From contig NW_021831732.1 in assembly GCF_006345805.1 (NCBI RefSeq), positions 1 to 34,242 on the forward strand: a DNA stretch of 34,242 bases, written 5' to 3'. This DNA comes from Octopus sinensis (Eukaryota). The notes under the pieces were generated by a model. That model did no database searches. It was not told where the DNA came from and saw only the letters and a list, made by a program, of their open reading frames with translations. Made by a program: the position numbers and the translations under genes. Positions 1-33,372 of the stretch are shown here, one piece after another (within the stretch, counting starts at the first letter, position 1; each line of letters opens with the position of its first letter).

Positions 1-4
1 ATAT
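1..4 (-). other. Possible start of a further phase-1 exon running off the window edge
   Basis: Minus strand reads TATTTATTTTACAG|ATAT, the same acceptor style (YYTTYACAG|AT) as the two micro-exons. Only 4 nt are visible. Confidence 0.25.
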
Positions 5-122
5 CTGTAAAATAAATATAACCATTATCCTATAAGCTTTCATTAAGCAAAACGTAAATCTGATGCTAAAATAGATAATTAGTAAATATATATCCTGCAA
101 CTGATAGAAGGATTATACAGAA

Positions 123-509
123 CTAGCATTATCGCCTGGCGTTGCTCGGGTTTGTAAGGGAAATAACTATAAAGCATTTTTAGAGAGTTATAGCCAAAAA
201 ATAGCAAAAAAATGGAAAAAAAATTATGGTAAATTTTTTTTTTTGAGAGTTAAAACGGTCGAGTTGCGTCCCCTAGACAGTCTGTGGTTTGTGTTTCTGA
301 TTCTCGACCCCATGTCGAATTTATCGATTTTTTTCAGAACTGGGGGAACTTTTCAAAATTTTCTCTGCGTTAGTTTTGAATTATGACATTGGGCTATGTG
401 TGTGTCAAGTTTCATCAGAATCAGTTGAAAGCCGTGGTCAGGGTGAGGGTACAACCTGACAGACACACAGAAACACACACAGACAAACTGCCGTTTATAT
501 AGAGAGAGA
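123..509 (-). mobile_element. Non-autonomous Helitron-type element
   Basis: Minus strand A|TC...CCCGAGCAACGCCAGG subterminal hairpin...CTAG|T, with a (CA/CAGA) microsatellite near the 5' end. These are the canonical Helitron termini and AT target. Confidence 0.75.
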
Positions 510-752
510 TTGGTAAAGACATTGGTTTATGTCAATTTTTGCTCTTAATAATATTTTTCTCTTTGAATTCTTCTTTCACAAACTAGAAAATGCCAAATCC
601 TTTCTATAACAATTAAATAGTACAACAGACAGACGATCCTCAAGAACGAAGCTAATTAATCCATTCAGTCAACTACAAATATATCCCACCAAGGGTCATA
701 ATGAAAACTTCTTAACAGGAAAACAAAAAAAAACTAATTCAGAAGAAACTTT

Positions 753-1710
753 GGATCTTTTCGGTTTGAACGGCAGTTTTTTCGAGCGGTGTCATATGAA
801 ATTGTCACCCATAATTATGACCCTAGTATCGATCCATTGCATTTCAATCTGTTTTAGGGTTAGGGGTGGGGGGAAGGGTATCTTTTTTTCTACAGAAATG
901 TAAATAAACCCAATCTGTTTCTTAAACGAGGGACATATTCATACGGCACAGAATGTTTTTTTTACCTCAATAGACGTGATTGATTGGTTGAAATTGCAGA
1001 AATTGAAGAAAAAAAACAACAAATATCTTACAAACTATAGAATTTTCTCAATAAAGCCAAGAGAAAAAGATGTTTTATAAACACATTCTACCAGTATACG
1101 AAGTTTAAAAGTGTTTAGTTACGTGGAAATTATTTTTAAAAAACTGCCGGTCAAACCGCAAAGATCCTATTTCTTAAATGAGGGACATATTCATACGGTG
1201 CAGAATGATTTTTTACGTCAATAGATGTGATTGATTGGTTGAAATTGCAGAAATTGAAGAAAAAAAACAACAAATATCTTACAAACTAGAGAATTTTCTC
1301 AATAAAGCCAAGAGAAAAAGATGTTTTATAAACACATTCTACCAGTATACGAAGTTTAAAAGTGTTTAGTTACCTGGAAATTATGTTAAAAAAACTGCCG
1401 GTCAAACCGAAAAGACCCAAATATCTTACAAACTATAGAATTTTCTCAATAAAGCCAAGAGAAAAAGATGTTTTATAAACACATTCTACCAGTATACGAA
1501 GTTTAAAAGTGTTTAGTTACCTGGAAATTATTTTTAAAAACTACTGTTCAAACCGAAAAGACCCAAATATCTTACAAACTATAGAATTTTCTCAATAAAG
1601 CCAAGAGAAAAAGATGTTTTATAAACACATTCTACCAGTATACGAAGTTTAAAAGTGTTTAGTTACGTGGAAATTATTTTAAAAAACTGCCGGTCAAACA
1701 GAAAAGATCC
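753..1710. mobile_element. Non-autonomous TIR element (GGATC termini, Merlin-like) with tandemly reiterated right end
   Basis: Left TIR GGATCTTTTCGGTTTGAACGGCAGTTTTT. Right-TIR copies end at 1167, 1418, 1564 and 1710. Flanks GAAACTTT/AAAATTTT match 6/8. A single-copy relative lies at 8028-8438. Confidence 0.75.
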
Positions 1711-1811
1711 AAAATTTTTGTAATTGTTCAGTTACAAACTGTGATTTTGATTAAGTATTAGAAAAATATTTGCATGATGATGATGACAACGGGGGGGGGG
1801 GGGCAACGGCA

Positions 1812-2870
1812 GCGCGTGAGCTGCCAGAATCCTTTTTATGCTGGATGAAATGCTTAGCAGTTTTTCAGCTGTTGTCACATTCTGAGTTCAAACTCCACCA
1901 AGGTCTTTCGTCCTTTCAGGGTCGATAAATTAAGTACCCATTAAACACTGAGGACAACGTAATTGTCCCCGCTCCGCAAAATTCAGGCCTTGTACCTATG
2001 GCAAGGGTCTTACTATCATCATCATCATCATCGAAGGTGTGAGCTGACAGAACTATTACTGCACCAGAAAAAAGGTCCTGTGGCGAGCTGGCAGAAACAT
2101 TAGCACGCCGGGCAAAATGCATAGCCGTGTTTTGTCTGCCGTTATGTTCTGAGTTCAAATTCCGCCAAGGTGGACTTTGCCTTTCATGCTTTCGGGGTCG
2201 ATAAATTAAGTACCAGTTACACACTGGGGTTGATGTAATCAGCTTAATACCTATGTCTGTCCTTGTTTGTCCCCTCTGTCTTTTAGGCCCTTGTGGGTAG
2301 TAAAGAAATAGGTATTTCGTCTGCCGCTACATTCATCATCATCATCATCGTTTAACGTCCGTTTTCTGCGCTAGCACAGGTTGGATGGTTCGACCAGGAC
2401 CTGGGAAGCCAGGGGCTGCACCAGGCTCCAGTCTGATCTGGCAGTGTTTCTACAGCTGGATGCCCTTCCTAACGCCAACCACTCTGCGAGTGTAGTGGGT
2501 GCTTTTTACGTGCCACCAGCACAGGTGCCAGGGGAGTCTGGCATCGGCCACGATCGGTTGGTGCTTTTAACGTGCCAAGGCGGCGCTGGCATCGGCCAAT
2601 TCTGAGTTCAAATTCCGCCAAGGTGGACTTTGCCTTTCATCCTTTCGGGGTCGATAAATTAAGTGCCAGTTACGCATTGGAGTTGATGTAATCAGCTTAA
2701 TACCTATGTCTGTCCTTGTTTGTCCCCTCTGTCTTTTAAGCCCTTGTGGGTAGTAAAGAAATAGGTATTTTTTTTTTACCCATTAACCCCTGAGTTCAAA
2801 TACTGCTAAGGTCAGCTTTGCCTTTCATTCCTTTGGGGTTGATGAAATAAAGGACCGACTAAATATACTC
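1812..2870 (+). mobile_element. Cluster of SINE family B copies (Nin/Deu-domain-like core), one split by an RTE tail
   Basis: Repeated GAGTTCAAATTCCGCC...GCCTTTCATCCTTTCGGGGTCGATAAATTAAGTACCAG core with a tRNA-like head GGCGAGCTGGCAGAAAC. Confidence 0.75.
2334..2598 (-). mobile_element. 5'-truncated RTE LINE 3' end
   Basis: Matches the 3' UTR and (GAT)n tail of the LINE at 16451-19828. Inserted inside a SINE unit. Confidence 0.85.
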
Positions 2871-2969
2871 AAATTAATGGAATTGAGGAACCTCTTCCAC
2901 ATGAAATTCCTGACCTTGCACCAAAATTAGAATTATTATTGTTATTATTAGCAAAAGCGATTTCCTTAC

Positions 2970-3218
2970 CTTTCATCACCAAAGTATAACTTTCTGAGCA
3001 GAAATAGTAGTCACAAAAACTCCAAGTCAAATCTTGTTCAGTGACATTATGGATCAAAAGAGTTGAGCTGTTACCCTTGTAATGAACTTCATAATTTCCT
3101 TTATTCTCACAAGTATCTACACATTGAAGATAATTAAACTCGTTAACCCACAAAACTGGTGTTCCAATCAAGCTTGATTCGATATGAATAGTAGCATTTT
3201 TTCCTAATACAACTGGTG
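2970..3218 (-). CDS. Exon, Ig-like domain 2 body (phase 1-1, 249 nt): PVVLGKNATIHIESSLIGTPVLWVNEFNYLQCVDTCENKGNYEVHYKGNSSTLLIHNVTEQDLTWSFCDYYFCSESYTLVMK
   Basis: Acceptor TTTTTATTTCAG, donor G|GTAAGG, open frame. Aligns without gaps to exon 6471-6226 (22/81 aa identical). N-glycosylation sequons NAT, NSS, NVT. Confidence 0.85.
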
Positions 3219-3384
3219 CTGAAATAAAAAGGTAAAAGTCAATATTATTGATTTGTTTCCCATATGAAAGATTTCTGTTTTTTTTTGTTTTTTTTCATCA
3301 TCATCGCCAATTTAACATTTATTTTTCCCTACTTGGGATCAGAGTTTTCTTTGTGCACAATTGGATGCACTTCCTGTCCTAATA

Positions 3385-3923
3385 GGTACTCGGACTGCAT
3401 AGGCAGTCCAATATCGCCTCCGCAGGTGGCTGCGGAGGTAATCTTTATATATAAAACTAAAGTTGTGTGTGTGTCTGTCTACTCCGATTTAGATTCCTAA
3501 CTACTCCCACATTTTGCGGTGCAGTTTAACCAAAAGCGGGTATCTTATAGTCATGATTCATATCGAGCCCTTCTGGGTTTTAGCGCGTGTCTACGATGAG
3601 TCTACGATTTAAAAAAAAATTTACGTTCATTTTTCCGCATTATTAACGCATTGTTGCTCAGTTTATGTAAGGGAAGTAACTCTCTAAAAATGCTTATATA
3701 GTTATTTCCCTTACAATGCCGAGCGATACTATTAGTAGAACATAAAATTCTATCAAGGGTCATAGCGACCTTTGACAAGAAAGAGTTTGCTTTCCTCTTC
3801 ACGGGCCCCAACTTGTCGGTGCAGAGTTGTCTGCAGGTGGCAAGGCAACTTGCTTGGGGGCTCCGATGAGGAGGATTCACCTTATTTCTATTGATATTTT
3901 TGTATTCGAGGGCTTGTTGTGTT
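3385..3923. mobile_element. Insertion flanked by a 27-bp direct repeat, hairpin-rich, interrupted by a Helitron
   Basis: CAATTGGATG(CA/TT)CTTCCTGTCCTAATA at 3358-3384 and 3924-3950. The paralogous intron near 6830 has one copy. Confidence 0.55.
3442..3735 (+). mobile_element. Non-autonomous Helitron-type element
   Basis: A|TCTTTATATATAAAA...GTGTGTCTGTCT 5' end and ...GCCGAGCGATACTATTAG|T 3' end (degenerate CTAG). Confidence 0.6.
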
Positions 3924-4189
3924 CAATTGGATGTTCTTCCTGTCCTAATATCCCAGTTTGTTGAATAACAAAGAGCCTGGACATGCTTTACCTAGTAAAC
4001 TGGAAACAAACGACCCCATATAAACGAGCCTTTTGTTTACTAAGATTGTGCAGAGTAAGATACACCCTTGTCACCCATAAAGTTAATCAAGTTGTACAGA
4101 AATTTCTATGCCACTGAAACCAGGAAACTGGCCCTTATGAGCCTGGCATCGCTTGAGAAGGAAATCAAGTTGTAGTCAGATGTTACAAG

Positions 4190-5165
4190 CATAAAGGAGA
4201 GGCCTTAAATGTGATTGACCAGGTCAAGAAAGTTATAATTAATTAGAAACAGAATTAGACTTGATGAGATGCAGTTTGATTTTCTGCCAGGAAGAAGGAC
4301 TACTGCTGCCATCTACTGAGTAAAACAACTTCAGATGTATTTAGCTAAAAAATAAATCATTTCACTTGGCATTTGTTGACTTGGAGACAGCTTTTGACAG
4401 GATATGGAGATCTCTGAGGAAGCTAGGAGTTGACAAATGGCTTGTGAGGGCTGGATACGCCATGTATAGGGGTGCTGTAAGAGTTAATACAGCAGACGAA
4501 GGTGACGAGCTGGCAGAACCGTTAGCATGCCGGGCGAAATACGTAGCTGTATTTCGTTTGCCGTTACGTTGTGAGTTCAAATTCCGCCGAGGTCGACTTT
4601 GCCTTTCATCATTTCGGGGTCAATAAATTCAGTACCAGTTACGCACTGGGGTCAATATAATCGACTTAATACCTTTCTCTGTCCTTGTTTGTCCCCACTG
4701 TGTTCAGCCCCTTTTGGATAGTGAAGAAATAGGTATTTCGTCTGCCGTTATGTTCTGAGTTCAAATTCCGCCAAGGTCAACTTTGCCTTTAATCCTTTCG
4801 GGGTCGATAAATTAAGTACCAGTTACGCACTGGGGTCAATATAATCGACTTAATACCTTTCTCTGTCCTTGTTTGTCCCCTCTGTGTTTAGCCTCTTGTG
4901 GGCAGTAAAGAAATAAGTATTTCGTCTGCCGTTATGTTCTGAGTTCAAATTCCGCCAAGGTCAACTTTGCCTTTAATCCTTTTGGGGTCGATAAATTAAG
5001 TACCAATTATGCACTGGGGTCGATGAAATCGACTTAATTTGTTTGTTTGTCCCCCCTGTGTTTAGCCCCTTGTGGGTAACAAAAAGAAATAAATACAGCA
5101 GTGAATTTAAGTTCCGGTAAGATTTCACCAAGGTTCCGTTCTCAGTACCTTCCTATTCATCAGTG
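4190..5165 (+). pseudogene. Degenerate RTE reverse-transcriptase fragment split by a SINE
   Basis: Remnant frames LDEMQF..PG..TT.AI, LAFVDLETAFDR, LRKLGVDKWLVRA and Y.SEFK..HQGSVLS, with stops and frameshifts. Confidence 0.8.
4496..5091 (+). mobile_element. SINE family B with three tandem 3' units
   Basis: 10-bp TSD AATACAGCAG at 4486-4495 and 5092-5101. Confidence 0.85.
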
Positions 5166-5167
5166 TG

Positions 5168-5305
5168 CAGGCACATGGCCTAGTGGCTAGAGTTGCGGAC
5201 ACACAGTCGAGGGATCACGGGTTCGAATCTCAGACTGGGCGATGTATGTGCTTATGAGCAAAACACCTAAGCTCCACGTTGCTCTGGCAGAAGGTAATGG
5301 CAAAC
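5168..5305 (+). mobile_element. SINE family C, partial (tRNA-like head)
   Basis: GGCACATGGCCTAGTGG...GGTTCGAATCTC with A/B boxes. Same family as 7369 and 14800. Confidence 0.7.
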
Positions 5306-5417
5306 TGATCAGAAAAGGAAATAAAAAAGTAACCAAAAACTCTGAGTTAAGGGAAAGAAACAGAAGACAGAATTGGAAAGAGTGTCTAGCGTAAAAGGAG
5401 TTTGTAAATCCATTTAC

Positions 5418-5456
5418 CGTTTTGGGTCATCTTATAAATTTCTATTCTTGTCGAAT
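5418..5456 (-). CDS. 39-nt micro-exon (phase 1-1): (N/D)STRIEIYKMTQN(A), A strand of Ig-like domain 2
   Basis: Acceptor TCATCTTTTACAG, donor G|GTAAAT. In frame between the two Ig exons and homologous to micro-exon 8932-8876. Confidence 0.72.
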
Positions 5457-5567
5457 CTGTAAAAGATGAAAACAAAAAAAGATGACAACAAAGAAAAAAG
5501 ATGAAAACAAAAAACGATGTAAACAAAAATTTTTGAGTTTCAGATTTTACATTCAATCAACAGGATT

Positions 5568-6199
5568 CATCATCATCATCATCATCGTTTAACGTCCGTT
5601 TTCCATGCTAGCATGGGTTGGACGGTTCAACTGGGGTCTGGGAAGCCAGGAGACTGCACCAGGCTCTAATCTGATCTGGCAGTGTTTCTACAGCTGGATG
5701 CCCTTCCTAATGCCAACCACTCCATGAGTGTAGTGGGTGCTTTTTACGTGCCACCGGCAAGGCTAGCAATGGCCATGATCGGATTGGTGCTTTTTACGTG
5801 CCACCGGCACAGGTGCCAGGCGAGGCTAGCAATGGCCATGATCGGATTGGTGCTTTTTACGTGCCATGGCACAGGTGCCAGGCGAGGCTAGCAATGGCCA
5901 TGATCAGATGGTGCTTTTTAGGTGCCACCAGCACAGGTGCCAGGCGAGGCTGGCAATGGCCACGATCGGATTGGTGCTTTTTACGTGCCATGGCACAGGT
6001 GCCAGGCGAGGCTGGCAATGGCCATGATTGGATTGGTGCTTTTTACGTGTCACCGGCACAGGTGCCAGGCGATGCTGGCAACAGCAACGATCAGATTGGT
6101 GCTTTTTACGTGCTACCGGCACAGAGGCCAGCTGACCCGGTTCTGATGGTTCTCTTACATGCCACCGGCGGCACTGGTATCACAACTACAATTTCCAAA
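5568..6199 (-). mobile_element. RTE LINE 3' end with an internal ~62-bp VNTR (7 unit starts)
   Basis: (GAT)n tail. GGTGCTTTTTA(C/G)G recurs near 5736, 5786, 5849, 5910, 5973, 6035 and 6098. Confidence 0.85.
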
Positions 6200-6225
6200 A
6201 GTATCATTATAATTCATTTCCTTAC

Positions 6226-6471
6226 TGTTTATTTTCAGATGAAATATCCCTCCTTCGACGTTGTCGTCTAGAAATTTCCAAGTCAAACATTTGTTAGTTA
6301 TTCTCCTCATCCAAAGAGAAGACTTGTTGCCACTCTGACTCACTTGAAATTCAGTACCTTTGGCACATGATCTATCGCACTCGTACTTCTTATTGCCACA
6401 AGACCACACAGCCGGTCTCTTCATGTTTTCAATTTCAATAGAGAGGGTGGCACTTCCTCCGAGTATTTCCC
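6226..6471 (-). CDS. Exon, Ig-like domain 1 body (phase 1-1, 246 nt): GEILGGSATLSIEIENMKRPAVWSCGNKKYECDRSCAKGTEFQVSQSGNKSSLWMRRITNKCLTWKFLDDNVEGGIFHLKIN
   Basis: Acceptor TTTCTTTATTTCAG, donor A|GTAAGG, open frame, ungapped homology to exon 3218-2970. Confidence 0.85.
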
Positions 6472-6499
6472 CTGAAATAAAGAAATCAAGATGTTTACT

Positions 6500-6787
6500 T
6501 CCTAGTTACATGGGTCCAGGTTCAGTCTCACTTAGTGGCACCTTGGGCAAGGGCGTGCCACTATAGTCTTAGGACAACCAAAGCCTTGTGAGCAGATTTG
6601 GTAGGTGGAAACTGAAAGAAGACTGTCGTGTGTCTGCATGTGTGTGAGTGTGTCTGTGTACGTGTGTGGTTGTGTGTGTTTCAGCAAAGCAGTTCAGCAA
6701 AGGAGACCAACAAAATAAGTACCAGACTAAAAATTTCTTCAAGGTAGTGCCCCAGCATGGCCATAGTCTAATGACTGAAACGAGCAA
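6500..6787 (+). mobile_element. Old SINE family A copy just upstream of the Ig1 acceptor
   Basis: Diverged GGTTCAGTC...GGCACCTTGGGCAAG...GGAAACTGAAAGAAG...CCAGCATGGCC. Confidence 0.7.
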
Positions 6788-6881
6788 GTGACCATCATGC
6801 TTGAATGGATCAGAGTTTTCATTTCTAACAGTAGGATGCTCTTCCTGCCACTAACCTCCATCTGTTTCCCAGTCTATAGAT

Positions 6882-7100
6882 CAGTGGTTTTCAACCAGGG
6901 TTCCACGGAACCTTAGGGTTCCGCCAGTACAGTCCAGGGGTTCCGCAAGAAGTTACAAAACTGCTGAAATCGGCAGTAATTTTGAATTCTCCTGTGCAGA
7001 TATGTGTGCATAAGACTATTAAATTATTGCACAGGGGTTCCTCGAACCAGTGGAATGTTTCCTTGGGGTTCCGCTCCAGCAAAAAGGTTGAAAAGCCCTG
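6882..7100. mobile_element. hAT-type MITE
   Basis: TIRs CAGTGGTTTTCAACC / GGTTGAAAAGCCCTG. 8-bp TSD CTATAGAT/CTATAGAA. Confidence 0.85.
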
Positions 7101-7368
7101 CTATAGAATAACAAACAGCCTGGATATGTTTTATGCAGGGAACTGGGAATAAACGACACCGTATAAATGGGCCTTTTGTTTACTAAGATTGTGCAACACA
7201 ACAAGATTTTGTGGTGAACTTCAAGCAAATGACATCGCTGGGAAAACCATATTGTTGCAAGTAGCCATCTTTAAATAAGGGGCCAATTTGACGTAACGTC
7301 GTATTGCCGAAGAAATATCATTGTCGTTTTTCCATTGGTTAATATAACTGCTCATATAAGGATTCTGT

Positions 7369-7663
7369 GGAGGCGCAATGGCCTAGTGGTTAGGGCAGCG
7401 GACTCGCGGTCGCAGGATTGCGGTTTCGATTCCCAGACCGGGCGTTGTGTGTGTTTATTGAGCGAAAACACCCAAAAAGCTCCACGAGGCTCCGGCAAGG
7501 GGTGGTGATCCCTGCTGTACTCTTTCACCACTCTTTCTCCCACTCTTTCTTCTGTCGGCCTGCTCGCTTAGCCAGCGGGGTGGCATCATTCGAAGGCTAA
7601 AACAATGTGAACGCATTGTGACCAGCGATGTGTAACAACATCTGATGGTCTGGTCGGTCACGT
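7369..7663 (+). mobile_element. SINE family C, full length
   Basis: tRNA-like head GGAGGCGCAATGGCCTAGTGG...GGTTTCGATTCCC. TSD ATATAAGGAT. Confidence 0.85.
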
Positions 7664-7908
7664 GATATAAGGATACTAAAAGTTACTTAAAGAATATTGG
7701 TATGTAATTTCGATTCTTTAAAGTCAAGTTGAGCAGTTATAAAAACCCGGGATTTTGGGATGTAATTAAACCCCACGACACTCACTCCTTTGAGACATTG
7801 GGGATTTTTCATGCCATGTCCAAGGAAAATCCAACAATATAGTAAAATAAGTTTGTGGCATATTTTAACTTCTAAAACACCATATCTACCCAGTGCTGCC
7901 CTCTAGTG

Positions 7909-8581
7909 CAATGGTTCTCAACCATTCTTCACCTATGGACCCCTTTGTTTCCTATTATACTCAGGTGAACCCTTATAACCATTTCAGGTTTAAAACATCC
8001 TAGTATATTCTTATAATCAAATATTTTGGATCTTTTTAGTTTGAACGGCAGTTTTTTCTAGCGGTGTCATATGAAATTGTCACCCATAATTATGACCCTA
8101 GTATCGATCTATTGCATTTCAATCTGTTTTAGGGTTAGGGGTGGGGGGAAGGGTATCTTTTTTTCTTCACAAATGTAAATAAACCCAATCTGTTTCTTAA
8201 ACGAGGGACATATTCATACGGCACAGAATGTTTTTTTTACCTCAATGGACGTCATTGATTGGTTGAAATTGAAGAAATTGAAGAAAAACAACAAATATCT
8301 TACAAACTATAGAATTTTCTCAATAAAGCCAAGAGAAGAAGATGTTTTATAAACACATTCTTCCAGTATACGGAGTTTAAAAGTGTTTAGCTACCTAGAA
8401 ATTATTTTTAAAAACTGCCGGTCAAACCAAAAAGATCCAATATTTTTAGGAATTATATAACAAAATTGTTAAAATATTTTGTGTACTGTAAAAATATAAC
8501 CCATTAATTGTACATAAATTTTAACAACAAAATCCTATATGGACCCCCAACAGCCATATTGACCCCGGTTAAAAACCACTA
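7909..8581. mobile_element. hAT-type MITE hosting a nested element
   Basis: CAATGGTTCTCAACC / GGTTAAAAACCACTA ends. TSD CTCTAGTG/TTCTAGTA (6/8). Confidence 0.7.
8028..8438. mobile_element. Non-autonomous TIR element with GGATC termini (Merlin-like), 411 bp
   Basis: TIRs GGATCTTTTTAGTTTGAACGGCAGTTTT / AAAACTGCCGGTCAAACCAAAAAGATCC. Perfect 8-bp TSD AATATTTT (8020-8027, 8439-8446). Superfamily assignment is inference. Confidence 0.8.
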
Positions 8582-8875
8582 TTCTAGTAGATTCCTCAAT
8601 GAGTGATTCTGGCTCATTGGCCTTTATCAATGGGAAACTCCAGAGAAAGATAAACCTGAGCAGATTCAAAGCTGTTGTTTTATCTAAAGAGCAGTCACTA
8701 TCAGTGACTGAGTTGTGCTAGTGAACTGCCTGGTTGGAATAAATGTTTTAAGAAATCAAAAAACACAAATGAAACAGTGAATAAAATTTATGAGTTGAGT
8801 TAAAGAAATAGAAGAGAGAATTGAAAAAGTTGTGTCTAGTTTAGAAGGCGAAAGGGGATAAGGCAATCCACTTAC

Positions 8876-8932
8876 CACTTTGGGTGAAATTTTTAACTCC
8901 TTCTGATCTCAAATCATTTGGACTTGCCAAAT
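8876..8932 (-). CDS. 57-nt micro-exon (phase 1-1): (D)LASPNDLRSEGVKNFTQS(G), linker plus A strand of Ig-like domain 1
   Basis: Acceptor TCATCTTCCACAG, consensus donor G|GTAAGT. In frame with exon 6471. Paralogous to 5456-5418. Confidence 0.75.
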
Positions 8933-9325
8933 CTGTGGAAGATGAATACAAGGACTTTTGAATTTCAGATTTTACATTCGATCAACAAGATTGTTTCCTA
9001 TTTCTGTTACGATAATTAAATAGTAATTAACACGAGTAGATCTAATTACACATTATATACTGTACCACTGGTATGTTACTCCATACTCCTATTAGCAATA
9101 ATCTACATAAACCTAACTTATACACTTAATCTAAGAAGCTCACACTTACGAACCTTTCAGAAAATATACGCGTGATGAGTTTTTCGTACTTACCAGCACT
9201 AAGTTATTTAAATGCACCCGAGCACTAAACATACTAGTCTGGCACACTACCCCCACCATAGCTCTATGTCACGCTGGTGAGACCCATATATTTCATAATT
9301 ATTGGTGCTACCTTGTTCATGGCTA

Positions 9326-9384
<59 letters not shown>

Positions 9385-9619
9385 CTTATATACAATTAGA
9401 TATATATTATAGCTAAACTACCCATAGTTGATACATTTACCTAAACACAAACACCCCCAACTGCATCTAGAACTGATATAGTTTCTTCCCTAAGACCAAA
9501 ATAGAGCACCCCTTTTAACTACACCCAAACAACACCATTTTAGATGAAAATAATGGTAATATGAATGAGATTAAAGAAATGAGTAATTATCTTAACGAAA
9601 TTACATGAATTAAATTATA

Positions 9620-10002
9620 GGCGCAGGAGTGGCTGTGTGGTAAGTAGCTTGTTTACCAACCACATGGTTCCAGGTTCAGTCCCACTGCGTGGCACCTTGG
9701 GCAAGTGTTTTCTACTACAGCCTAGAGCCGACCAATGCCCTGTGAGTGGATTTGGTAGACGGAAACTGAAAGAAGCCTGTCGTATACATGTATATATGTT
9801 TGTGGGTCTGTCCCCCTAGCATTGCTTGACAACCGATGCTGGTGTGTTTACGTCCCCGTCACTTAGCGGTTCAGCAAAAGAGACCGATAGAATAAGTACT
9901 GGGCTTACAAAGAATAAGTCCCGGGGTCGATTTGCTTGACTAAAGGCGGTGCTCCAGCATGGCCGCAGTCAAATGACTGAAACAAGTAAAAGAGTAAAGA
10001 GT
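9620..10002 (+). mobile_element. SINE family A
   Basis: Head GGCGCAGGAGTGGCTGTGTGG...GGTTCAGTCCCAC, (AAGAGT)n tail, approximate TSD ATGAA(A)TTAAA(A)TTATA. Confidence 0.9.
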
Positions 10003-10078
10003 ATGAGAGATGAAATTAAAATTATATTTTGGAAGGGACATTTTCAGTGGTTAGTTAATGAAATCAAGCTGTTAGTAA

Positions 10079-10414
10079 TGACCCCCTTCGGTCAGACACT
10101 GACCATGGGTTTGCACCTAGAGAGTTACCCTCTGAGGCACAAGTCTGGGCGAGGTTGTTTTATGGAAGACCAGCAGTCGCCCATGCATACCGGCCTCCCC
10201 TCTCCACATCACCGATGTTGTCCAAGGGAAAGGCAAAGGGGCCGATACAGCTTGGCACCAGTGACGTCGCAACTCATTTCTACAGTTGAGTGAACTGAAA
10301 CATCGTGAAATAAAGTGTCTTGCTCAAGAACACAACACGCAGCCCGGTCCGGGATTCGAGCTCACAAACTCACGATCGTAAGCTCGACGCTCTAACCACT
10401 GAGCCATGCGCCTT
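10079..10414 (-). mobile_element. SINE family D
   Basis: tRNA-like head on the minus strand. 14-bp TSD CAAGCTGTTAGTAA (10065-10078, 10415-10428). Same family as 26123-26443. Confidence 0.9.
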
Positions 10415-10639
10415 CAAGCTGTTAGTAAATAATATATTTAAAGTGTTAATGGCGAATGAAGTCAAGGAGTGGAAAAGAATGAGATGAATCGTAGCTTCGC
10501 TTCTCAAGATTGTTTGGAGGAGGAATCGGATGTCGGCAGAAAAAAGCAAAACTAAAGCAAAAACGGAAGAAAACTTACAAAAGCACCATGAAAACAAAAA
10601 GATCGACTTTAAAGGGTCCATCTGAAAAAATAATTTTGG

Positions 10640-11050
10640 AAAATATGCAAAAAATTGTTAGCATGCGAGACAAAATGTTTCGTGGTATATCGACCGTCTA
10701 TATTCTCTTGGTTCAAATTCTGCTGAGGTCGACTTTGCCTTTCATCCTTTCGGGGTCGATAAATTAAGTACCAGTTACGCACTGGGGTCGATGTAATCGA
10801 CTTAATACCTATGTCTGTCCTTGTTTGTCCCTCTGTGTTTAGCCCCTTGTGGATAATAAAGAAATAGGTATATTGACCGTCTATATTCTCTTGGTTCAAA
10901 TTCTGCTGAGGTCGACTTTGTCCTTCATCCTTTCAGGGTCGATAAAATAAGTACCAGTTGAGAACTCGGGGGGGGGGGTCAATGTAATCAACTTACCCCC
11001 ACCCCTCCCCCAAACTTGCTGGCCGTATGCCAAAGTTTGAAAGCAATGTT
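10640..11050 (+). mobile_element. SINE family B, two tandem core units
   Basis: Duplicated GACCGTCTATATTCTCTTGGTTCAAATTCTGCTGAGGTCGAC core. Confidence 0.75.
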
Positions 11051-11189
11051 ACAAATTTAGTTGTTACCTTAATTCAAGGGCAATGCATGAATATCATCAT
11101 CATCATCACCATTTAACGTACATTAATACTTTTTGATAGTTATATATATGTATAAAAAAAAATATATAAATATATATAAAATATATATA

Positions 11190-11825: not shown

Positions 11826-12340
11826 TTAAATTCACTGCTGTATTTATTTATTTTTATTACCCACAAGGGGCTAAACACATGGGGGACAAACAAGGACAGA
11901 CAAACAAATTAAGTCGATTACATCGACCCCAGTGCGTAACTGGTACTTAATTTATCGACCCCGGAAGGATGAAAGTCAAAGTCGACCTCAGCGGAATTTG
12001 AACTCAGAACATAAAGACAGAGGAAATACCTATTTCTTTACTACCCACAAGGGACTAAACACAGAGGGGACAAACAGATTAAGTCGATTATATCGACGCC
12101 AGTGCGTAACTGGTACTTATTTGATTGACCCCGAAAGGATGAAATGCAAAGTCGACCCCGGCGGAATTTGAACTCAAAACCTAACGGCAGACGAAATACC
12201 TATTTCTTTACCACCCACAAGGGGTTAAACACAGAGAGGACAAACAAGGACAGACAAACGTATTAAGTCGATTATATCGACCCTAGTGCGTAAATGGTAC
12301 TTATTTAATTGACCCCGAAAGGATGAAAGGCAAAGTCGAA
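11826..12340 (-). mobile_element. SINE family B trimer, 5'-truncated, carrying 3' flank from the 5.1-kb copy
   Basis: Three core units on the minus strand. 11826-11849 is the exact reverse complement of 5087-5110. Confidence 0.85.
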
Positions 12341-13179: not shown

Positions 13180-13557
13180 CGGCGAGTTGGCAGAATCGTT
13201 AGCACGCTGGGCGAAAGTTCAAATTCCGCCGAGGTCGACTTTGCCTTTTATCCTTTCGGGGTCGATAAATTAAGTACCAGTTCCACACTGGGGTCGATGT
13301 AATCGACTTAATCCATTTGTCTGTCCCTGTTTGTCCTCTCTGTGTTTAGCCCCTTGTGGGTAGTAAAGAAATAGGTATTTCGTCCGTCCTTACGCTCTGA
13401 GTTCAAATTCCGTCGAGGTCGAATTTGCCCTTCATCCATTTAGGGTCGATAAAATAAGTACCAGTTACGCACTGGGGTCGATATAATCGACTTAATCCGT
13501 CTGTCTGCCCTTGTTTGTCCCCTCTGTGTTTAGCCCTTTGTGGGTAGTAAAGAAATA
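13180..13557 (+). mobile_element. SINE family B dimer
   Basis: Head plus two core units. Confidence 0.85.
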
Positions 13558-16452: not shown

Positions 16453-19400
16453 ATCATCATCGTTTAACGTCCGTTCTCCATGCTAGCATGGGTTGGACGG
16501 TTCGACCGGGGATCTGGGAAGCCAGAAGGCTGCACCAGGCTCCGGTCTTATCTGGCAATGTTTCTACAGCTGGATGCTCTTCCTAACGCCAACCACTCCG
16601 TGAGTGTAGTGGGTGCTTTTTACGTGCCACCTGCACTGGTGCCAGGCGAGGCTGGCATCGGCCACAGTTGGATTGGTGCATTTTACGTGCCACCTGCACG
16701 GAAGCCAGTCGAGGCGGCACTGGCTTCGGCCACGATTCGGATGGTGCTTTTTACATACCACCGACACGGAAGCCAGTCAAGGCGGCGCTGGCATCAGCCA
16801 CGATTCGGATAGTGCTTTTTACGTATCTCCAGTCCAGGGGTCCTGGCATCTGTCGGGTGCCAGTCATAGGATTGGTTCAATTTCGATTTCAATTTCACTT
16901 GCCCCAACAGGTCTTCGCAAGCAAGGTGCCTGTCGTCGGATGAGGTTCGATATCGACTTCGCTTGCCTCAACAGGTCTTTGTGTGTCGAAGGGAGGAAAG
17001 GCATGCATAAGTGGGCTGGACTCACTTGTCCTGCCTGGTCTTTTCACGCACAGCATATTTCCAAAGGTCTCGGTCGCTGGTCATTTCTTCAGTGAGGCCT
17101 AAAGTTCGAAGGATGTGCTTCACCACCTCGTCCCAAGTTTTCCTGGGTCTACCTCTTCCACGGGTTCCCTCCACTGCTAGGGATTGGCACTTTTCACACA
17201 CCTATCTTCATCCATTCTCGCCACATGACCATACCAGCGCAATCGTCTTTCTTGCACACCACAACTGATGCCTCTTAGGTACAACTTTTCTCTCAAGGTA
17301 CTTACACTCTGTCGAGCATGCACACTGACATTACACATCCATCGGAGCATACTGGCTTCATTTCTCGCGAGCTTACGCATGTTCTCAGCAGTCACGGCCC
17401 AAGTTTCACTGCCATGTAGCATGGCTGTTTGTACACATGCGTCATACAGTCTGCCTTTTACTCTGAGCGAGAGGCCTTTAGTCACCAGCAGAGGTAAGAG
17501 CTCCCTAAACTTTGCCCAGGCTATTCTTACTCTAGCCGTTACACTTTCAGCACACCCACCCCCACTACTGACTTGGTCACCAAGATAACGGAAGCTATCA
17601 ACTACTTCTAGTTTTTCCCCCTGGAAAGTGACGGAAGTTGTTTCCTGCAGATTTTCAGAGGTTAATGCTCCCGAGCATCTGCCACATACAAAAACCATCT
17701 TCCTAGTTAGCCTTCCTATGACATTGCTGCACCTCTTATGTGTCCATAGCTTACACTTGGTGCATCTTATAGAGTTTCTACCTACACCTTTTCTACAGAT
17801 CGAGCAGGGCCATCTACCTGAAGGCGTTTGTGATTTGTCTACCTTCCTACTTATTACGACTTTGGTTTTAGCTAGATTGACTCTAAGGCCCTTCGATTCT
17901 AAACCTTGCTTCCACACCTGAAACTTCTTCTCCAGTTCTGATAGTGACTCAGCAATTAGAGCAAGGTCATCAGCATAGAGGAGCTCCCAGGGGCATCCTG
18001 TCTTGAATTCCTCCGTTATTGCCTGGAGGACTATGATAAATAGGAGGGGGCTGAGGACTGAGCCTTGGTGGACCCCTACCTCTACCCGGAATTCTTCACT
18101 GTACTCGTTGCCAACCCTCACCTTACTAGCAGCGTCCCTGTACATGGCTTGCACAGCTCTCACTAACCATTCATCTATTCCTAGTTTCCTCATTGACCAC
18201 CAGATGAGGGATCGGGTGACCCTGTCGAAGGCTTTCTCCATGTCAACAAATGCCAGGTACAGGGGCTTATCTTTGGCTAGGTATTTCTCCTGCAGCTGCC
18301 TTACCAGGAATATAGCATCAGTGGTACTTTTCCCTGGCACGAACCCAAACTGCATCTCATCTAAACTAACTCTCTCTCTAATTAGTTGGCTTATGACCCT
18401 CTCCGTAACCTTCATCACCTGATCCAACAGCTTGATGCCCCTGTAGTTATTTGTATCTAGGGCATCGCCTTTACCTTTGTAGCAGTTGACTATTATGCTG
18501 CTACACCAGTCATTGGGTATGACTCCTTCGTGTATCACCTGATTAACTATACGGGTGACTAGGCTATAGCCAACACTACCAGATATTTTGAGCATCTCTG
18601 CAGTGATACCTGATGGGCCTGGGGCTTTCCTTGTCTTCATGCTTCTAATTGCCTTAACTACCAAGGAACTATCAACCCTGATAGCTGGTCCCTCTGTTGG
18701 GTCAACGTTCGGCAGACTCTCTTTATCCCATTCATTTTCTTTATTCAGCAACCTTTCATAGTGGCGTCTCCAAGCCTCTCTCTTTGCATCCTCGTTTAGC
18801 GCAAGTGAACCATCTTCCATGTGAACACACTTCTCTTCTACCACATCACAATTCTCTTTCACACACTGTCTTGCAACGCGAAACACCTCCAGTTTTTGGT
18901 CCTCACGGCGCAGAACATTGGCAAATTTTTTCTTATCTGCTTTCCTTCTGGCTAGATAGACCTGTCTACTAGCTTCCCTTTTAGCAGTCTGATATAATTC
19001 CCTGCTACCCCCATTCTTCCAGTGCTTCCAAGTCTGTCTCTTTTCTCTAATAGCCCTGTCTACAACACTGTTCCACCACCATGTTACCTTGGGACGAGAG
19101 GGGACTTTGCACCAGCCACAGATCTGGTCAGTGGCTCTCAGCAGGTTGTCCCTTAGAAACGTCCAGTTGCTCTCTACCCCATGTGATACTCTATCCCCTT
19201 CTACTTCGTCAAAGGCTTCAAGTAGCATGTCCCTAAATCTCTGTCCATTCGCAGGATCTTTAAGCTTCCAGATCCTTCTTCTCCATGTTGGTCGTCTTCT
19301 GGTTGTTCTCCTAGTCCTGATCCTAAAGTCACTAACTACCAGTCTATGTTGTGGGGTACATTCTTCACCTGGGAAGGTTTTGGCATTTATAAGCAGCCAT

Positions 19401-19828
19401 CTCTCCCTTTGCCTGGCAAAGATGTAGTCAATTTGGCTGGTATGTTGGCCCGATCGGTAGGTGACTAGGTGGCTGGTAGGTTTCGTGAAGTTAGTGTTGC
19501 AAATCCTAAGATTATTTGCATCGCAGAACTCCAGCAGCCTGGTTCCCTCCTCGTTGCGGGAACCAAAGCCATAGCCTCCATGTACGCCATGGAAGCCCCC
19601 AGCATGTCGTCCAACGTGACCATTGAAGTCACCAGCCACAAAGAGAAGGTCTCTGTCGTTCATCAACGAGGTAGTCTGCAGTAGAGTGTCATAGAATCGG
19701 TCTTTCTGTCCATCGGGTAGCCCTGGCTGAGGGGCATAGGCTGATATAATGGTTGCTAAACTATGATGAAGCGCTAATCTAATCTTAAGTATTCTGTCGC
19801 ATACTCTGATTATCTCAATTACTTTATC
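16451..19828 (-). mobile_element. RTE-clade LINE, 5'-truncated inside the APE endonuclease, with ~570-bp 3' UTR and (GAT)n tail
   Basis: APE motifs (ISAYAPQ, AGDFNGHVG, QIDYI, QHRLVV) and RT motifs (QFGF, VDMEKAFD, HQGSVLSP, YADD, YLG). Inserted in a (TA)n tract. Confidence 0.95.
17022..19828 (-). pseudogene. RTE APE-RT ORF lacking its N-terminus, with a single 1-nt frameshift at 17191-17194
   Basis: Open from DKVIEIIRVCDR to DEDRCVK. Adding one A restores KCQSLAVEGTRGRGRPRKTW...KTRQDK-stop (TGA 17024-17022). Confidence 0.9.
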
Positions 19829-29165: not shown

Positions 29166-29334
29166 CTAGAAACATGACACTCCTGCATCCTCATAGTGAG
29201 CGCAGTTGTGGTTTAACCATCCGTTGTGTTGACAATCAGACAGAGAGAGTTCGTTACCTAGGCAACTGACGTCATCCATGGCTATTTGACCGGTTCCAGC
29301 TCCAAATGCTGCCAACATGATGGCACGCCCACGT
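29166..29334 (-). CDS. Exon, C-half of SRCR domain 2: [55 protein letters not shown]-stop (may extend to a donor at 29138)
   Basis: Acceptor TTTTCTCTTCCTGTAG, phase 2 matches the preceding exon, four SRCR cysteines. Not present in the supplied ORF track. Confidence 0.9.
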
Positions 29335-30190: not shown

Positions 30191-30336
30191 CGGGCGGGCA
30201 GCTGAATTATATTTCATGAACTTCTTCCATGAAATATAATTTAGATCGCTTTAACCCTTTACTTACCAGATTTCAGCATAAATAGATATATTTTGGTGTA
30301 AAAACCCTTTAAAAAGAATGTTGGTGGGTTACTCAC

Positions 30337-30481
30337 GTGTAGCCCAGCATTCGACAGACAACGGTGGCATCCCTCTCGTCCCATGAATCATCACATATTG
30401 TACCCCAGACACCTGCATGGTAAATCTCAACACGTCCTTCATTGGGTGCATTACCACCAACTAACTTGACTGACCCTTCAC
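30337..30481 (-). CDS. Exon, N-half of SRCR domain 2: [49 protein letters not shown]
   Basis: Acceptor TATTATTCAG, donor AC|GTGAGT, phases 1-2. Classic GRVE..WGT.CDD.W..VVCR.LG motif. Six Cys over two exons indicates group A SRCR. Confidence 0.94.
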
Positions 30482-30517
30482 CTGAATAATAGACAGACCA
30501 AAATTTCTTATTAACTC

Positions 30518-33016: not shown

Positions 33017-33186
33017 CATTGATGCACATAACACTGGCGTCCTCATTGTGGCCACAGTTGTGTCTGCCCCAACCATGGTGGGAACAATGGAACAAGGAGG
33101 TTTCATTGCCCTGACAGGACACGTCATCCATCCAAATGGCACCACGTCCAGCTCCATAACGGGCTGAGATGAATGCTTGGCCAGAT
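33017..33186 (-). CDS. Exon, C-half of SRCR domain 1: SGQAFISARYGAGRGAIWMDDVSCQGNETSLFHCSHHGWGRHNCGHNEDASVMCIN
   Basis: Acceptor TTTTCTCTTTCTTCCAG, donor G|GTAAGA, phases 2-1. The N-half must lie beyond 34242. Confidence 0.93.
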
Positions 33187-33372
33187 CTGGAAGAAAGAGA
33201 AAATGGGTTTACCAATGTGGGGATTAGGGGTCAGCCAGAAGAAACATCTGGTTTAGAAAACCTGCCTCGATATATTCTTCTGATCTATGCCATACATGTG
33301 TGTTTGTATGTGTGTTGTATATAAAAAGGAAGCTTTGCATTTCTACTAAAACTTCATCTTCATATTCGAGGT

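What the first reader, a model, noticed from the sequence alone, without database searches (positions are those of the whole stretch)
2970..8932. Non-canonical Ig-like domain: no B-F disulfide, a CxxxC pair instead, A strand on a micro-exon
Seen: spliced repeats NFTQSGEILGGSATLSIE...PAVW...ECDRSC...SSLWMRRIT...LTWKFLD and KMTQNAPVVLGKNATIHIE...PVLW...QCVDTC...STLLIHNVT...LTWSFCD align without gaps. They keep V-set-like hallmarks (TQ in strand A, GxxATL in A'-B, C-strand Trp, S(S/T)LxI in strand E). Hydrophobic residues replace both canonical cysteines, LTWxF replaces DxGxYxC, and both repeats conserve CxxxC. Each domain's A strand is on its own 39- or 57-nt symmetric micro-exon, so skipping would remodel the N-terminal strand in frame. 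The Ig fold is inference from the pattern.
Basis: partly seen in the sequence, partly recalled or inferred. Interest (0 to 1): 0.7.

Follow-up and report, generated by a model that had tools for sequence, protein, structure and literature searches.

The report
Divergent mollusc Ig-like domain, split exons
This octopus gene encodes a cell-surface protein with two immunoglobulin-like domains of an undescribed molluscan type: the usual core disulfide is missing, a conserved CxxxC loop is present, and each domain's first strand sits on its own tiny exon.

Summary
On the minus strand lie five phase-1 exons with AG/GT splice sites. They are a signal-peptide exon, a 57-nt micro-exon, a 246-nt main exon, a 39-nt micro-exon and a 249-nt main exon. 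The transmembrane exon lies just outside the window. The product is 96% identical to an uncharacterized 290-aa Octopus type I membrane protein.

The two repeats belong to a family of about 35 proteins in Octopus and Argonauta, with distant relatives in abalone. No Pfam model reaches threshold. Even so, the family profile matches true I-set Ig domains (hhalign 95%), AlphaFold gives a confident eight-strand beta-sandwich (pLDDT 89), and every top Foldseek hit is an Ig domain.

The B-strand Cys is replaced by Ile. Abalone relatives carry DAGTWKI, which links DxGxYxC to LTWxF. CxxxC is present in all 38 family domains examined (CxxxxC in two), and three domains have no other Cys, so it is probably a self-closed loop. 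The predicted A strand lies on the micro-exon in both domains.

A paralogous locus has the same two-exon module, surplus micro-exons, and a CU-rich intron element found only downstream of micro-exons. RefSeq isoforms of one paralogue mix micro- and main exons independently.

This is a new variant of the Ig fold, better described as I-set-like than V-set-like. Its function and any splicing regulation are untested.

The parts
10579..10621 (-). First coding exon: ATG plus 43 nt. It encodes the start of the signal peptide, MDPLKSIFLFSWCF, and ends in phase 1.
   Evidence: tblastn of P0001 gives 100% identity over 14 aa. Splice sites TTTTTTCAG|ATG and TTT|GTAAGT. It lies outside the finding's coordinates.
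8876..8932 (-). Micro-exon 1: 57 nt, phase 1-1, encoding YLASPNDLRSEGVKNFTQS. It carries the end of the signal peptide, the N-terminal linker, an NFT sequon and the predicted A strand of domain 1.
   Evidence: The AF2 A strand at residues 8-15 is VKNFTQSG. The family-specific donor G|GTAAGTGGAT and acceptor CATCTTCCACAG are present. This exon is tandemly duplicated in O. vulgaris.
8800..8828 (-). CU-rich intronic element about 45 nt downstream of the micro-exon 1 donor.
   Evidence: It matches the 29-nt motif CTTTTCAATTCTGTCTTCTATTTCTTTCC with 4 mismatches. In 124 kb of three loci the motif occurs only downstream of micro-exons.
6226..6471 (-). Main exon 1: 246 nt, phase 1-1. It encodes strands A'/B to G of Ig-like domain 1, including PAVW, ECDRSC and LTWKF.
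   Evidence: Family HMM score 120.9 bits. AF2 and Foldseek results.
5418..5456 (-). Micro-exon 2: 39 nt, phase 1-1, encoding (N)STRIEIYKMTQN. It carries the interdomain linker and the predicted A strand of domain 2.
   Evidence: The AF2 two-domain model has a strand at 105-108, KMTQ. The conserved donor and acceptor motifs are present.
5352..5380 (-). CU-rich intronic element downstream of micro-exon 2.
   Evidence: 2 mismatches to the 29-nt motif. The 100-nt downstream flank is 70-77% identical to those of a paralogous locus.
2970..3218 (-). Main exon 2: 249 nt, phase 1-1. It encodes strands A'/B to G of Ig-like domain 2, including PVLW, QCVDTC, LTWSF and the FCDYYFC pair.
   Evidence: Family HMM score 105.2 bits. 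In the AF2 two-domain model the pLDDT of this domain is 79-97. The next exon (transmembrane plus tail) lies about 1.1 kb beyond the window start, judged from the O. vulgaris locus.

Best explanation
The region is most of an octopus gene for a type I membrane glycoprotein. The orthologue is the uncharacterized LOC115231405.

Its ectodomain is two tandem, strongly diverged I-set-type Ig-like domains. They belong to a molluscan domain family that no Pfam model recognises at threshold.

In this family the core B-F disulfide has been replaced by hydrophobic packing. Ile sits at the B-strand Cys position. Trp and Phe/Ile sit at the Tyr and Cys positions of DxGxYxC. The domain is instead stapled locally in two ways:
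- A six-residue C(D/N)x(S/T)C insertion after strand C', present in every family domain examined, that most likely forms its own small disulfide loop.
- One further, subtype-specific disulfide. Type A (window domain 1) pairs the end of strand C with the E-F loop. Type B (window domain 2) bridges the F-G hairpin. Type C pairs strand A with strand G.

Each domain is built from a two-exon module. A symmetric micro-exon encodes the linker and edge strand A. A roughly 246-nt exon encodes strands A'/B to G. All exons are phase 1-1, so modules and half-modules can be duplicated, skipped or recombined in frame.

I infer that the protein acts as a cell-surface recognition or adhesion molecule, and that its ectodomain composition is varied by module duplication and possibly by alternative splicing.

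Shown here: the gene model, the family, the Ig relationship, the loss of the canonical Cys residues, the Cys co-variation and the exon architecture at two independent loci.

Inferred: the actual disulfide connectivity, regulated splicing and function.
For: Gene model and orthologue.

Family:
- 52 hits at E<=1e-3 among 1.84 billion representatives.
- The small members looked up by name are all octopod and all 'uncharacterized' or hypothetical, apart from one zinc-finger-annotated model that looks like a fusion; three others are unnamed Logan contigs, one from an octopus meta-transcriptome.
- Abalone relatives carry CNPSC and DAGTWKI.

Ig relationship:
- The profile also hits Pfam-verified multi-I-set proteins.
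- hhalign gives 95% probability, E 3.5e-8, with the B-strand Cys aligned to Ile and CxxxC as a six-residue insertion.
- AF2 pLDDT is 89.3 for domain 1 alone and 79.8 for the two-domain model.
- All top Foldseek hits are Ig domains.

Cysteine co-variation:
- C46 and C50 are present in all 38 domains (two as CxxxxC).
- C39 and C76 co-occur in 16 of 18 domains.
- C82 and C87 co-occur in 6 domains.
- Three domains contain only the CxxxC cysteines.

Exon module:
- The same micro + main architecture is found at a paralogous locus 11 Mb away, with 4 micro-exons for 2 main exons.
- The introns of the two modules in the window keep collinear remnants of similarity.
- The intron flank downstream of micro-exons is 69-77% identical between paralogues, against 56-64% for main-exon coding sequence.
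- A 29-nt CU-rich element is found only there.

Isoforms and expression:
- RefSeq isoforms X8, X9, X11 and X12 of LOC115225115 combine micro- and main exons independently.
- A spliced family mRNA with the micro-exon segment included is present in an octopus meta-transcriptome (PMC11662614).
Against: - No single family domain reaches Pfam's gathering score for any Ig model. The best are I-set at E 0.0078 and Ig_3 at E 0.0022.
- Foldseek TM-scores are only 0.57-0.65 with rmsd of 4-5 A.
- The I-set profile used in hhalign was built from proteins chosen because they matched the query profile, so its E-value is partly circular.
Disulfide connectivity rests on co-variation only.
- No RNA evidence was examined for this gene. 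The isoforms are predicted models from a paralogue.
- Between the window and O. vulgaris the CDS shows 5 non-synonymous and 2 synonymous codon changes. This is compatible with relaxed constraint, though the counts are too few to test.
- Cytoplasmic tails in the family are short and carry no recognised signalling domain, so function is a guess.
Confidence: 0.72

Rival explanations
1. The micro-exons are constitutive. The intron after strand A is only an inherited intron position, the surplus micro-exons are dead duplicates, and the multi-isoform RefSeq models are annotation noise from a repetitive locus. On this view nothing is remodelled by splicing.
For: - In every model inspected, each main exon is preceded by at least one micro-exon.
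- Skipping micro1 would delete the signal-peptide cleavage region, so at least that exon must be included.
- The O. vulgaris model simply includes both copies of the duplicated micro1, as a gene predictor would.
- Conserved intron flanks may only reflect what a 39-nt exon needs in order to be recognised at all.
Against: - Four isoforms of one paralogue differ exactly by whole micro- or main exons, including an A-strand swap in X12.
- The intronic flank is more conserved than the coding sequence, and the element is specific to micro-exons. From general knowledge of splicing, both are typical of regulated exons.
Confidence: 0.4
2. The conserved C(D/N)x(S/T)C is not a structural disulfide. It is instead a functional site, such as a metal-binding or redox-active dithiol at the top of the domain in a CDR2-like position.
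For: - Conservation is extreme, including the flanking acidic residues (YECDRTC), across octopods and abalone.
- The motif is an insertion relative to I-set domains. It lies after strand C'.
Against: - The setting is an extracellular, glycosylated domain, where paired cysteines are normally oxidised.
- Three domains have only these two cysteines, which fits a self-closed pair.
- Two members tolerate CxxxxC spacing, which suits a loop disulfide better than a precise metal site.
Confidence: 0.15
3. The repeat is some other beta-sandwich (FN3, cadherin-like or a novel fold), and the Ig-like motifs are convergent.
For: Pfam Ig models stay below threshold. Foldseek TM-scores are moderate.
Against: - All top-50 PDB matches for the one-domain model are Ig domains, and none is FN3 or cadherin. 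The same holds for the two-domain model.
- The profile matches many true I-set repeats.
- The abalone relatives retain DxG before TW.
Confidence: 0.04
4. This particular gene is a decaying or non-functional copy of the family.
For: Between two closely related octopus genomes there are 5 non-synonymous and 2 synonymous codon differences. No expression data were seen for this locus.
Against: - All five exons are open with intact splice sites in both genomes.
- Coding identity (98.7%) is at or above that of the surrounding introns, which are 96-98% identical.
- All family-defining residues are kept.
Confidence: 0.08

Closest known systems
I-set immunoglobulin domain (Pfam PF07679; titin, obscurin and telokin type)
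   Same: - About 95 residues, with predicted strand order A-B-C-C'-D-E-F-G and no C'' strand.
- Conserved C-strand Trp, GxxxTL in strand B and S-T-L-x-I in strand E.
- Profile-profile match at 95%.
- Titin M1 and obscurin Ig domains are among the best Foldseek hits.
   Different: - There is no B-F cysteine pair.
- DxGxYxC is replaced by (D)LTWxF.
- A six-residue CxxxC insertion follows strand C'.
- There are extra local disulfides.
- Every single domain scores below Pfam's gathering cut-off.
Uncharacterized multi-repeat membrane proteins of abalone (Haliotis XP_046341939.2 and XP_071094808.1)
   Same: - The same CxxxC (CNPSC) and TWK(I) in strand F, with no B-strand Cys.
- A Cys pair near the N and C termini of each repeat, as in the octopus type C domains.
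- A C-terminal membrane span.
   Different: - They keep the Asp-x-Gly of the canonical F-strand motif (DAGTWKI).
- They have 3-5 repeats.
- Their gene structure was not examined.
- They are only distantly similar (E 1e-4 to 1e-15 in the library search).
Extracellular Ig domains that naturally lack the canonical disulfide, such as CD2 domain 1 and CD58 (recalled from memory, not tested here)
   Same: A cell-surface Ig-like domain held together by hydrophobic packing instead of the B-F cystine.
   Different: Those are isolated vertebrate V-like domains with no CxxxC insertion, no family-wide replacement pattern and no micro-exon architecture.
[quoted passage not shown]
   Same: Very short, in-frame exons inside or between Ig domains of a surface receptor. 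Including them changes the ectodomain surface or linker.
   Different: - There the inserts are a few residues in loops or linkers of otherwise complete domains, and their regulation and ligand effects have been demonstrated.
- Here the micro-exon carries a whole edge strand plus the linker for every domain, and regulation is unproven.
Combinatorial-exon surface receptors (insect Dscam1 half-Ig exon arrays, clustered protocadherins; from general knowledge)
   Same: Tandem arrays of duplicated, frame-compatible exons that encode parts of adhesion domains. Gene copies are clustered.
   Different: No evidence of mutually exclusive choice, of stochastic expression, or of homophilic specificity. The exon numbers are far smaller.

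Membership tests
Immunoglobulin superfamily fold (Ig-like beta-sandwich) | Two-sheet Greek-key beta-sandwich of 7-9 strands | tested here: met
   AF2 predicts 8 strands at pLDDT 89.3 and pTM 0.81. All top Foldseek PDB hits are Ig domains. This is a prediction, not an experimental structure.
Immunoglobulin superfamily fold (Ig-like beta-sandwich) | Invariant Trp in strand C packing on the core | tested here: met
   W37 is present in 37 of 38 family domains and aligns with the I-set Trp.
Immunoglobulin superfamily fold (Ig-like beta-sandwich) | Canonical disulfide between strands B and F | tested here: not met
   The B position is Ile (or Leu/Val/Thr). The F position is Phe or Ile, by strand parity and the abalone DAGTWKI intermediate. 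This feature is common in Ig domains but not obligatory.
I-set domain (PF07679) | Score at or above Pfam's gathering cut-off (23.7 bits) | tested here: not met
   Window domain 2 scores 14.2 bits, E 0.048, and domain 1 has no hit. Five of 32 family domains match weakly, the best at E 0.0078.
I-set domain (PF07679) | Detectable homology to bona fide I-set repeats by profile methods | tested here: met
   The family profile hits obscurin-like and other Pfam-verified multi-I-set proteins, E down to 1.5e-37 summed over repeats. hhalign gives 95%, E 3.5e-8. The target profile was built from those same hits, so this is partly circular.
I-set domain (PF07679) | F-strand motif DxGxYxC | tested here: not met
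   It is replaced by (D)LTWxF, with a one-residue deletion relative to DAGTWKI of the abalone relatives.
V-set domain (PF07686) | Extra C'' strand and a domain length of about 110 aa | tested here: not met
   There are 96 residues including the linker. Only one strand (C') and a short loop are predicted between C and D. There is no Pfam V-set hit. VL domains do appear among the Foldseek hits, at lower TM-scores.
Regulated micro-exon systems in IgSF receptors (for example PTPdelta meA/meB) | Short symmetric exon within an Ig ectodomain | tested here: met
   The exons are 57 nt and 39 nt, both phase 1-1. Paralogues have 39-nt exons.
Regulated micro-exon systems in IgSF receptors (for example PTPdelta meA/meB) | Demonstrated alternative, regulated inclusion | not testable with these tools
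   Only predicted RefSeq isoforms of a paralogue and conserved intronic elements are available. No read-level RNA data could be examined.
Molluscan FREPs (IgSF plus fibrinogen domain) | C-terminal fibrinogen-related domain | tested here: not met
   The orthologue ends in a transmembrane segment and a short tail. The database holds no precomputed Pfam domain for it. The window exons match nothing but a weak I-set hit.
Fibronectin type III domain | FN3 topology or profile match | tested here: not met
   There is no FN3 among the top 50 Foldseek hits and no Pfam fn3 hit.

The most novel reading that the evidence does not exclude
Molluscs possess a previously undescribed class of Ig-like domain with a rewired disulfide architecture. 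Octopods have expanded it into clustered genes built from frame-compatible half-domain exons. Conserved intronic elements direct combinatorial inclusion of the A-strand micro-exons and of the domain exons. The result is a splice-generated repertoire of surface receptors for neural or immune recognition, comparable in principle to Dscam or protocadherin diversity.
Probability: 0.12. Interest if true: 0.8.

Novelty: new variant of a known kind. Interest (0 to 1): 0.48.

Why it matters
- It defines a domain family that current libraries miss. Dozens of octopus surface proteins annotated 'uncharacterized' can now be read as IgSF members, with a clear sequence signature: PxxW, C(D/N)x(S/T)C and TWxF.
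- It gives a natural example of an extracellular Ig fold that has dropped the core cystine and moved its disulfides to loops. The abalone sequences preserve an intermediate.
- The two-exon module and its micro-exon-specific intron element offer a tractable system for asking how very short exons are recognised.
- It also allows a test of whether cephalopods diversify surface receptors by splicing. Cephalopods are already known for expanded protocadherin, zinc-finger and receptor families.

Tried and rejected
- Direct Pfam scan of the two repeats gave only sub-threshold hits.
- A sequence search of PDB with the repeat profile found nothing significant. Obscurin Ig appeared at E 1.1.
- The word-indexed protein search found only the orthologue. 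With the family alignment it found a single extra protein, so it was of little use for this family.
- Literature searches by topic and by six locus IDs found no description of the family.
- A look-up of the genomic locus of LOC115225115 (P0003) found nothing on record.
- The hhalign register aligned the Cys of 'FCD' in domain 2 with the canonical F-strand Cys. I rejected this register for three reasons.
  - That part of the alignment has low confidence.
  - Predicted strand parity puts W and F, not that Cys, on the core side.
  - Abalone DAGTWKI aligns W with Tyr and I with Cys.
- I considered that the SRCR exons upstream on the same strand might belong to this gene. I rejected this because the orthologous model starts with its own ATG and signal peptide at e1.
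- I considered that the 'GKEITSANNNNNNSF' tails of several family models might be a conserved secreted-isoform C-terminus. They are most simply read-through of the conserved donor GTAAGGAAAT into an AAT-rich intron.
- The tRNA scan was negative.

Full report
**1. What is in the sequence**

The window is eukaryotic DNA from an octopus. Bases 1-11189 are 96-98% identical to Octopus vulgaris chromosome OX597842.1 at about 27.4 Mb.

Splice-site inspection and comparison with the orthologous protein give five coding exons, all in phase 1 and all with AG/GT boundaries:
- e1, 10579-10621: ATG plus 43 nt, encoding MDPLKSIFLFSWCF.
- micro1, 8876-8932: 57 nt.
- main1, 6226-6471: 246 nt.
- micro2, 5418-5456: 39 nt.
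- main2, 2970-3218: 249 nt.

The spliced product is 96% identical to XP_036355964.1, 'uncharacterized protein LOC115231405', of 290 aa. That protein continues into a transmembrane segment and a short tail. In O. vulgaris the exon for these lies about 4 kb downstream of main2, which would be about 1.1 kb beyond the start of this window.

So the finding covers most of a type I membrane protein: signal peptide, two repeats, membrane span.

**2. Check of the observation**

The two repeats are related well beyond chance. tblastn gives E about 1e-9 for 73 gapless residues at 30% identity. Over 96 residues they are 27% identical without gaps. The exon lengths of 57 and 39 nt and their symmetry are as stated.

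There are three small corrections:
- Matching the two TQ dipeptides needs a one-residue shift.
- micro1 also carries the end of the signal peptide.
- Each repeat has two more cysteines besides the CxxxC pair.

**3. A family, not a one-off**

A profile of the two repeats was searched against 1.84 billion representative proteins. It found 52 proteins at E<=1e-3.

About 35 of these are small proteins with 1-4 copies of the same repeat, mostly followed by a membrane span. Those with a source name are from Octopus sinensis, O. bimaculoides, O. vulgaris or Argonauta hians. They are annotated 'uncharacterized' or hypothetical. The one exception is a zinc-finger-annotated model that looks like a fusion. 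Three others are unnamed contigs from Logan assemblies, one of them from an octopus meta-transcriptome. Many loci share one O. sinensis scaffold or the same O. vulgaris chromosome.

More distant hits are abalone proteins, XP_046341939.2 and XP_071094808.1, and a third protein that is probably also from abalone. They have 3-5 repeats with the same hallmarks...FLWVRP...TCNPSC...STLTIHSV..DAGTWKI.

The remaining hits are giant proteins that Pfam confirms as arrays of I-set domains, for example a lamprey obscurin-like protein.

Literature searches by topic and by locus ID found no description of the family.

**4. Is it an Ig domain?**

No single repeat reaches any Pfam gathering score. The best results are I-set at 14 bits for window domain 2, I-set at E 0.0078 among 32 family domains, and Ig_3 at E 0.0022. 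Three independent lines nevertheless agree:
- The family profile collects true I-set proteins in the library search.
- hhalign of the family alignment against an I-set profile gives 95% probability, E 3.5e-8. That profile was built from the hit proteins, so the result is partly circular.
- AlphaFold2 with the 32-sequence alignment gives a confident all-beta model of domain 1, with pLDDT 89.3, pTM 0.81 and eight strands. Its top PDB matches are all Ig domains: titin M1, several obscurin Ig domains, MyBP-C C0, twitchin Ig26 and antibody VL, at TM 0.57-0.65 and E about 3e-4.

A two-domain model has pLDDT 79.8, with domain 2 at 79-97. It matches tandem Ig structures.

There is no C'' strand and the length is about 95 residues. 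The domain is therefore I-set-like rather than V-set-like.

**5. What replaced the canonical features**

In the profile-profile alignment the B-strand Cys column is Ile (ATLSIE against ATLxCE). The ECDxxC segment is a six-residue insertion after strand C'.

For strand F the hhalign register is unreliable, so I used two other arguments:
- The predicted F strand is T-W-K-F-L in domain 1 and T-W-S-F-C in domain 2. Lys or Ser between W and F implies that W and F face the core.
- The abalone repeats read D-A-G-T-W-K-I, which superimposes on D-x-G-x-Y-x-C with W at the Tyr position and I at the Cys position. The octopus (D)-L-T-W-x-F is the same motif with one residue deleted.

**6. Cysteine pattern (38 domains)**

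- C46 is invariant, and C50 is present in 36. The other two domains have CxxxxC.
- C39, two residues after the C-strand Trp, and C76, three residues before the F-strand Trp, co-occur in 16 of 18 cases. This is type A, which includes window domain 1. In Ig topology both positions lie at the same end of the domain.
- C82 and C87 (FCDxxFC), across the F-G turn, co-occur in six domains. This is type B, which includes window domain 2.
- A third pattern pairs an A-strand Cys with C87. This is type C. The abalone repeats have a similar pair near their N and C termini.
- Three domains contain only the CxxxC cysteines. In an extracellular domain these two therefore most likely bond to each other.

All connectivity here is inferred.

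**7. Exon architecture**

AlphaFold places strand A of domain 1 at VKNFTQSG and strand A of domain 2 at KMTQ. Both are encoded by the micro-exons.

The two modules in the window keep collinear remnants of intron similarity, so micro-exon, intron and main exon were duplicated as a unit.

A paralogue 11 Mb away on the O. vulgaris chromosome (P0008, locus L002) has the same architecture.

The donor context G|GTAARTGGAT picks out micro-exons and nothing else in 124 kb of three loci. Each one is preceded, at 39 or 57 nt, by CATyTTyyACAG.

Counts of micro-exons against main exons are 2:2 in the window, 3:2 in O. vulgaris and 4:2 in the paralogue. In O. vulgaris, micro1 has been duplicated in a 1.2-kb tandem repeat. 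Surplus micro-exons therefore exist.

Between paralogues, the 100 nt of intron downstream of micro-exons is 69-77% identical. This is more than the 56-64% identity of the main-exon coding sequence.

A 29-nt CU-rich element, CTTTTCAATTCTGTCTTCTATTTCTTTCC, lies about 45 nt downstream of eight of the nine micro-exon donors, within four mismatches, and occurs nowhere else. From general knowledge of splicing, such flank conservation is typical of exons that depend on intronic regulators. I did not test that here.

**8. Splicing evidence**

Four RefSeq isoforms of the paralogue LOC115225115 decompose exactly into shared units:
- X8: M1-u1-u2-M2-u3-M3-u4-M4.
- X9: M1-u1-M5-u3-M2-u3-u5-M4.
- X11: M1-u3-M2-u3-M3-u4-M4.
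- X12: M1-u1-M2-u3-M3-u4-M4.

Micro-exons and main exons are therefore used independently. The combinations include orphan micro-exons in tandem and one A-strand swap.

These are predicted models, and I could not inspect the supporting reads.

One family member (P0016) is present as a fully spliced mRNA contig, with its micro-exon segment included, in an octopus meta-transcriptome, SRR3401912 (PMC11662614).

For the window's own gene:
- Skipping micro2 would stay in frame, giving ...KIN-T-PVVLG..., but would delete strand A and the linker.
- Skipping micro1 would fuse the hydrophobic core of the signal peptide to main1 and remove the cleavage region. That is unlikely to be a functional option (read from the sequence).

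**9. Constraint**

Between the window and O. vulgaris the 634-nt CDS differs at 8 positions. These amount to 5 non-synonymous and 2 synonymous codon changes. Introns differ by 2-4%. The exons are intact and slightly better conserved than the introns. The ratio suggests weak constraint or fast evolution, but the counts are too small to test.

**10. Interpretation**

The best-supported reading is a cell-surface glycoprotein, with about seven N-glycosylation sequons, that displays two divergent I-set-type domains of a molluscan subfamily with relocated disulfides. Each domain is built from a duplicable two-exon module.

By analogy with other small IgSF membrane proteins, the most likely role is recognition or adhesion. 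The tails in the family are short and lack recognisable signalling domains.

The closest functional parallel for the micro-exons is the meA/meB mini-exon system of PTPdelta (PMC4423211, PMC12598525). There the regulation has been demonstrated and the inserts are loop or linker peptides, not a whole strand.

**11. Verdict**

The feature is a new variant of a known fold. It is a real, conserved and apparently undescribed domain family, but its function and splicing regulation remain open.

Noticed in passing
window 29190-29330, 30333-30500, 33070-33215 (minus strand): Exons of a neighbouring gene upstream on the same strand encode scavenger-receptor cysteine-rich (SRCR) domains. Each domain is split into an N-terminal and a C-terminal half-exon. 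Example peptides are [17 protein letters not shown] and IWMDDVSCQGNETSLFHC.
   Followed up: partly
window 17177-19666 (minus strand): An 829-aa open reading frame of a non-LTR retrotransposon, with endonuclease and reverse-transcriptase regions (YADD motif), lies between the Ig-like gene and the SRCR exons.
   Followed up: no
L001 11754-12594 and 12901-13750 (O. vulgaris), against window 8439-9277: O. vulgaris carries a tandem duplication of about 1.2 kb that contains a second, identical copy of micro-exon 1. The annotated protein includes both copies, which repeats NDLRSEGVKNFTQS. The window genome has a single copy.
   Followed up: yes
window 2960-2969 and 6216-6225 (minus strand); L001 and L002 main-exon donors: All six main exons end with the identical donor context GTAAGGAAAT. 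Several database models of family members (P0007, P0022, P0033, P0021) end in ...GKEITSANNNNNNSF. This looks like read-through of that donor into an AAT-rich intron rather than a genuine C-terminus.
   Followed up: partly
window 5756-6131; also 16612-16824: A 62-68-nt tandem array (six copies) begins about 95 nt past the main exon 1 donor, inside the intron. It creates a spurious 157-aa ORF on the plus strand that overlaps the end of main exon 1.
   Followed up: no
window 4549-5038, 11899-12339, 13216-13557 and other sites: Many copies of a SINE-like repeat of about 184 nt (GAGTTCAAATTCCGCC...GGGGTCGATAAATTAAGTACCAGTTACGCACTGGGGTCGATATAATCGACTTAAT) fill the introns. ARAGORN finds no intact tRNA.
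   Followed up: partly
proteins P0020/P0060, P0025, P0030, P0043, P0045 (Octopus, Argonauta): One subfamily has a single CxxxC Ig-like domain followed by a different Cys-rich module of about 90 aa (KPKIE..C.Y.V.A.CS.P.T.I.C....CSDG.T....G.V.C.F). This module was not analysed.
   Followed up: no
protein P0036 (XP_036358517.1, 'zinc finger protein 239-like', O. sinensis): This gene model fuses C2H2 zinc fingers to a C-terminal CxxxC Ig-like domain. It is probably an annotation merge of neighbouring genes.
   Followed up: no
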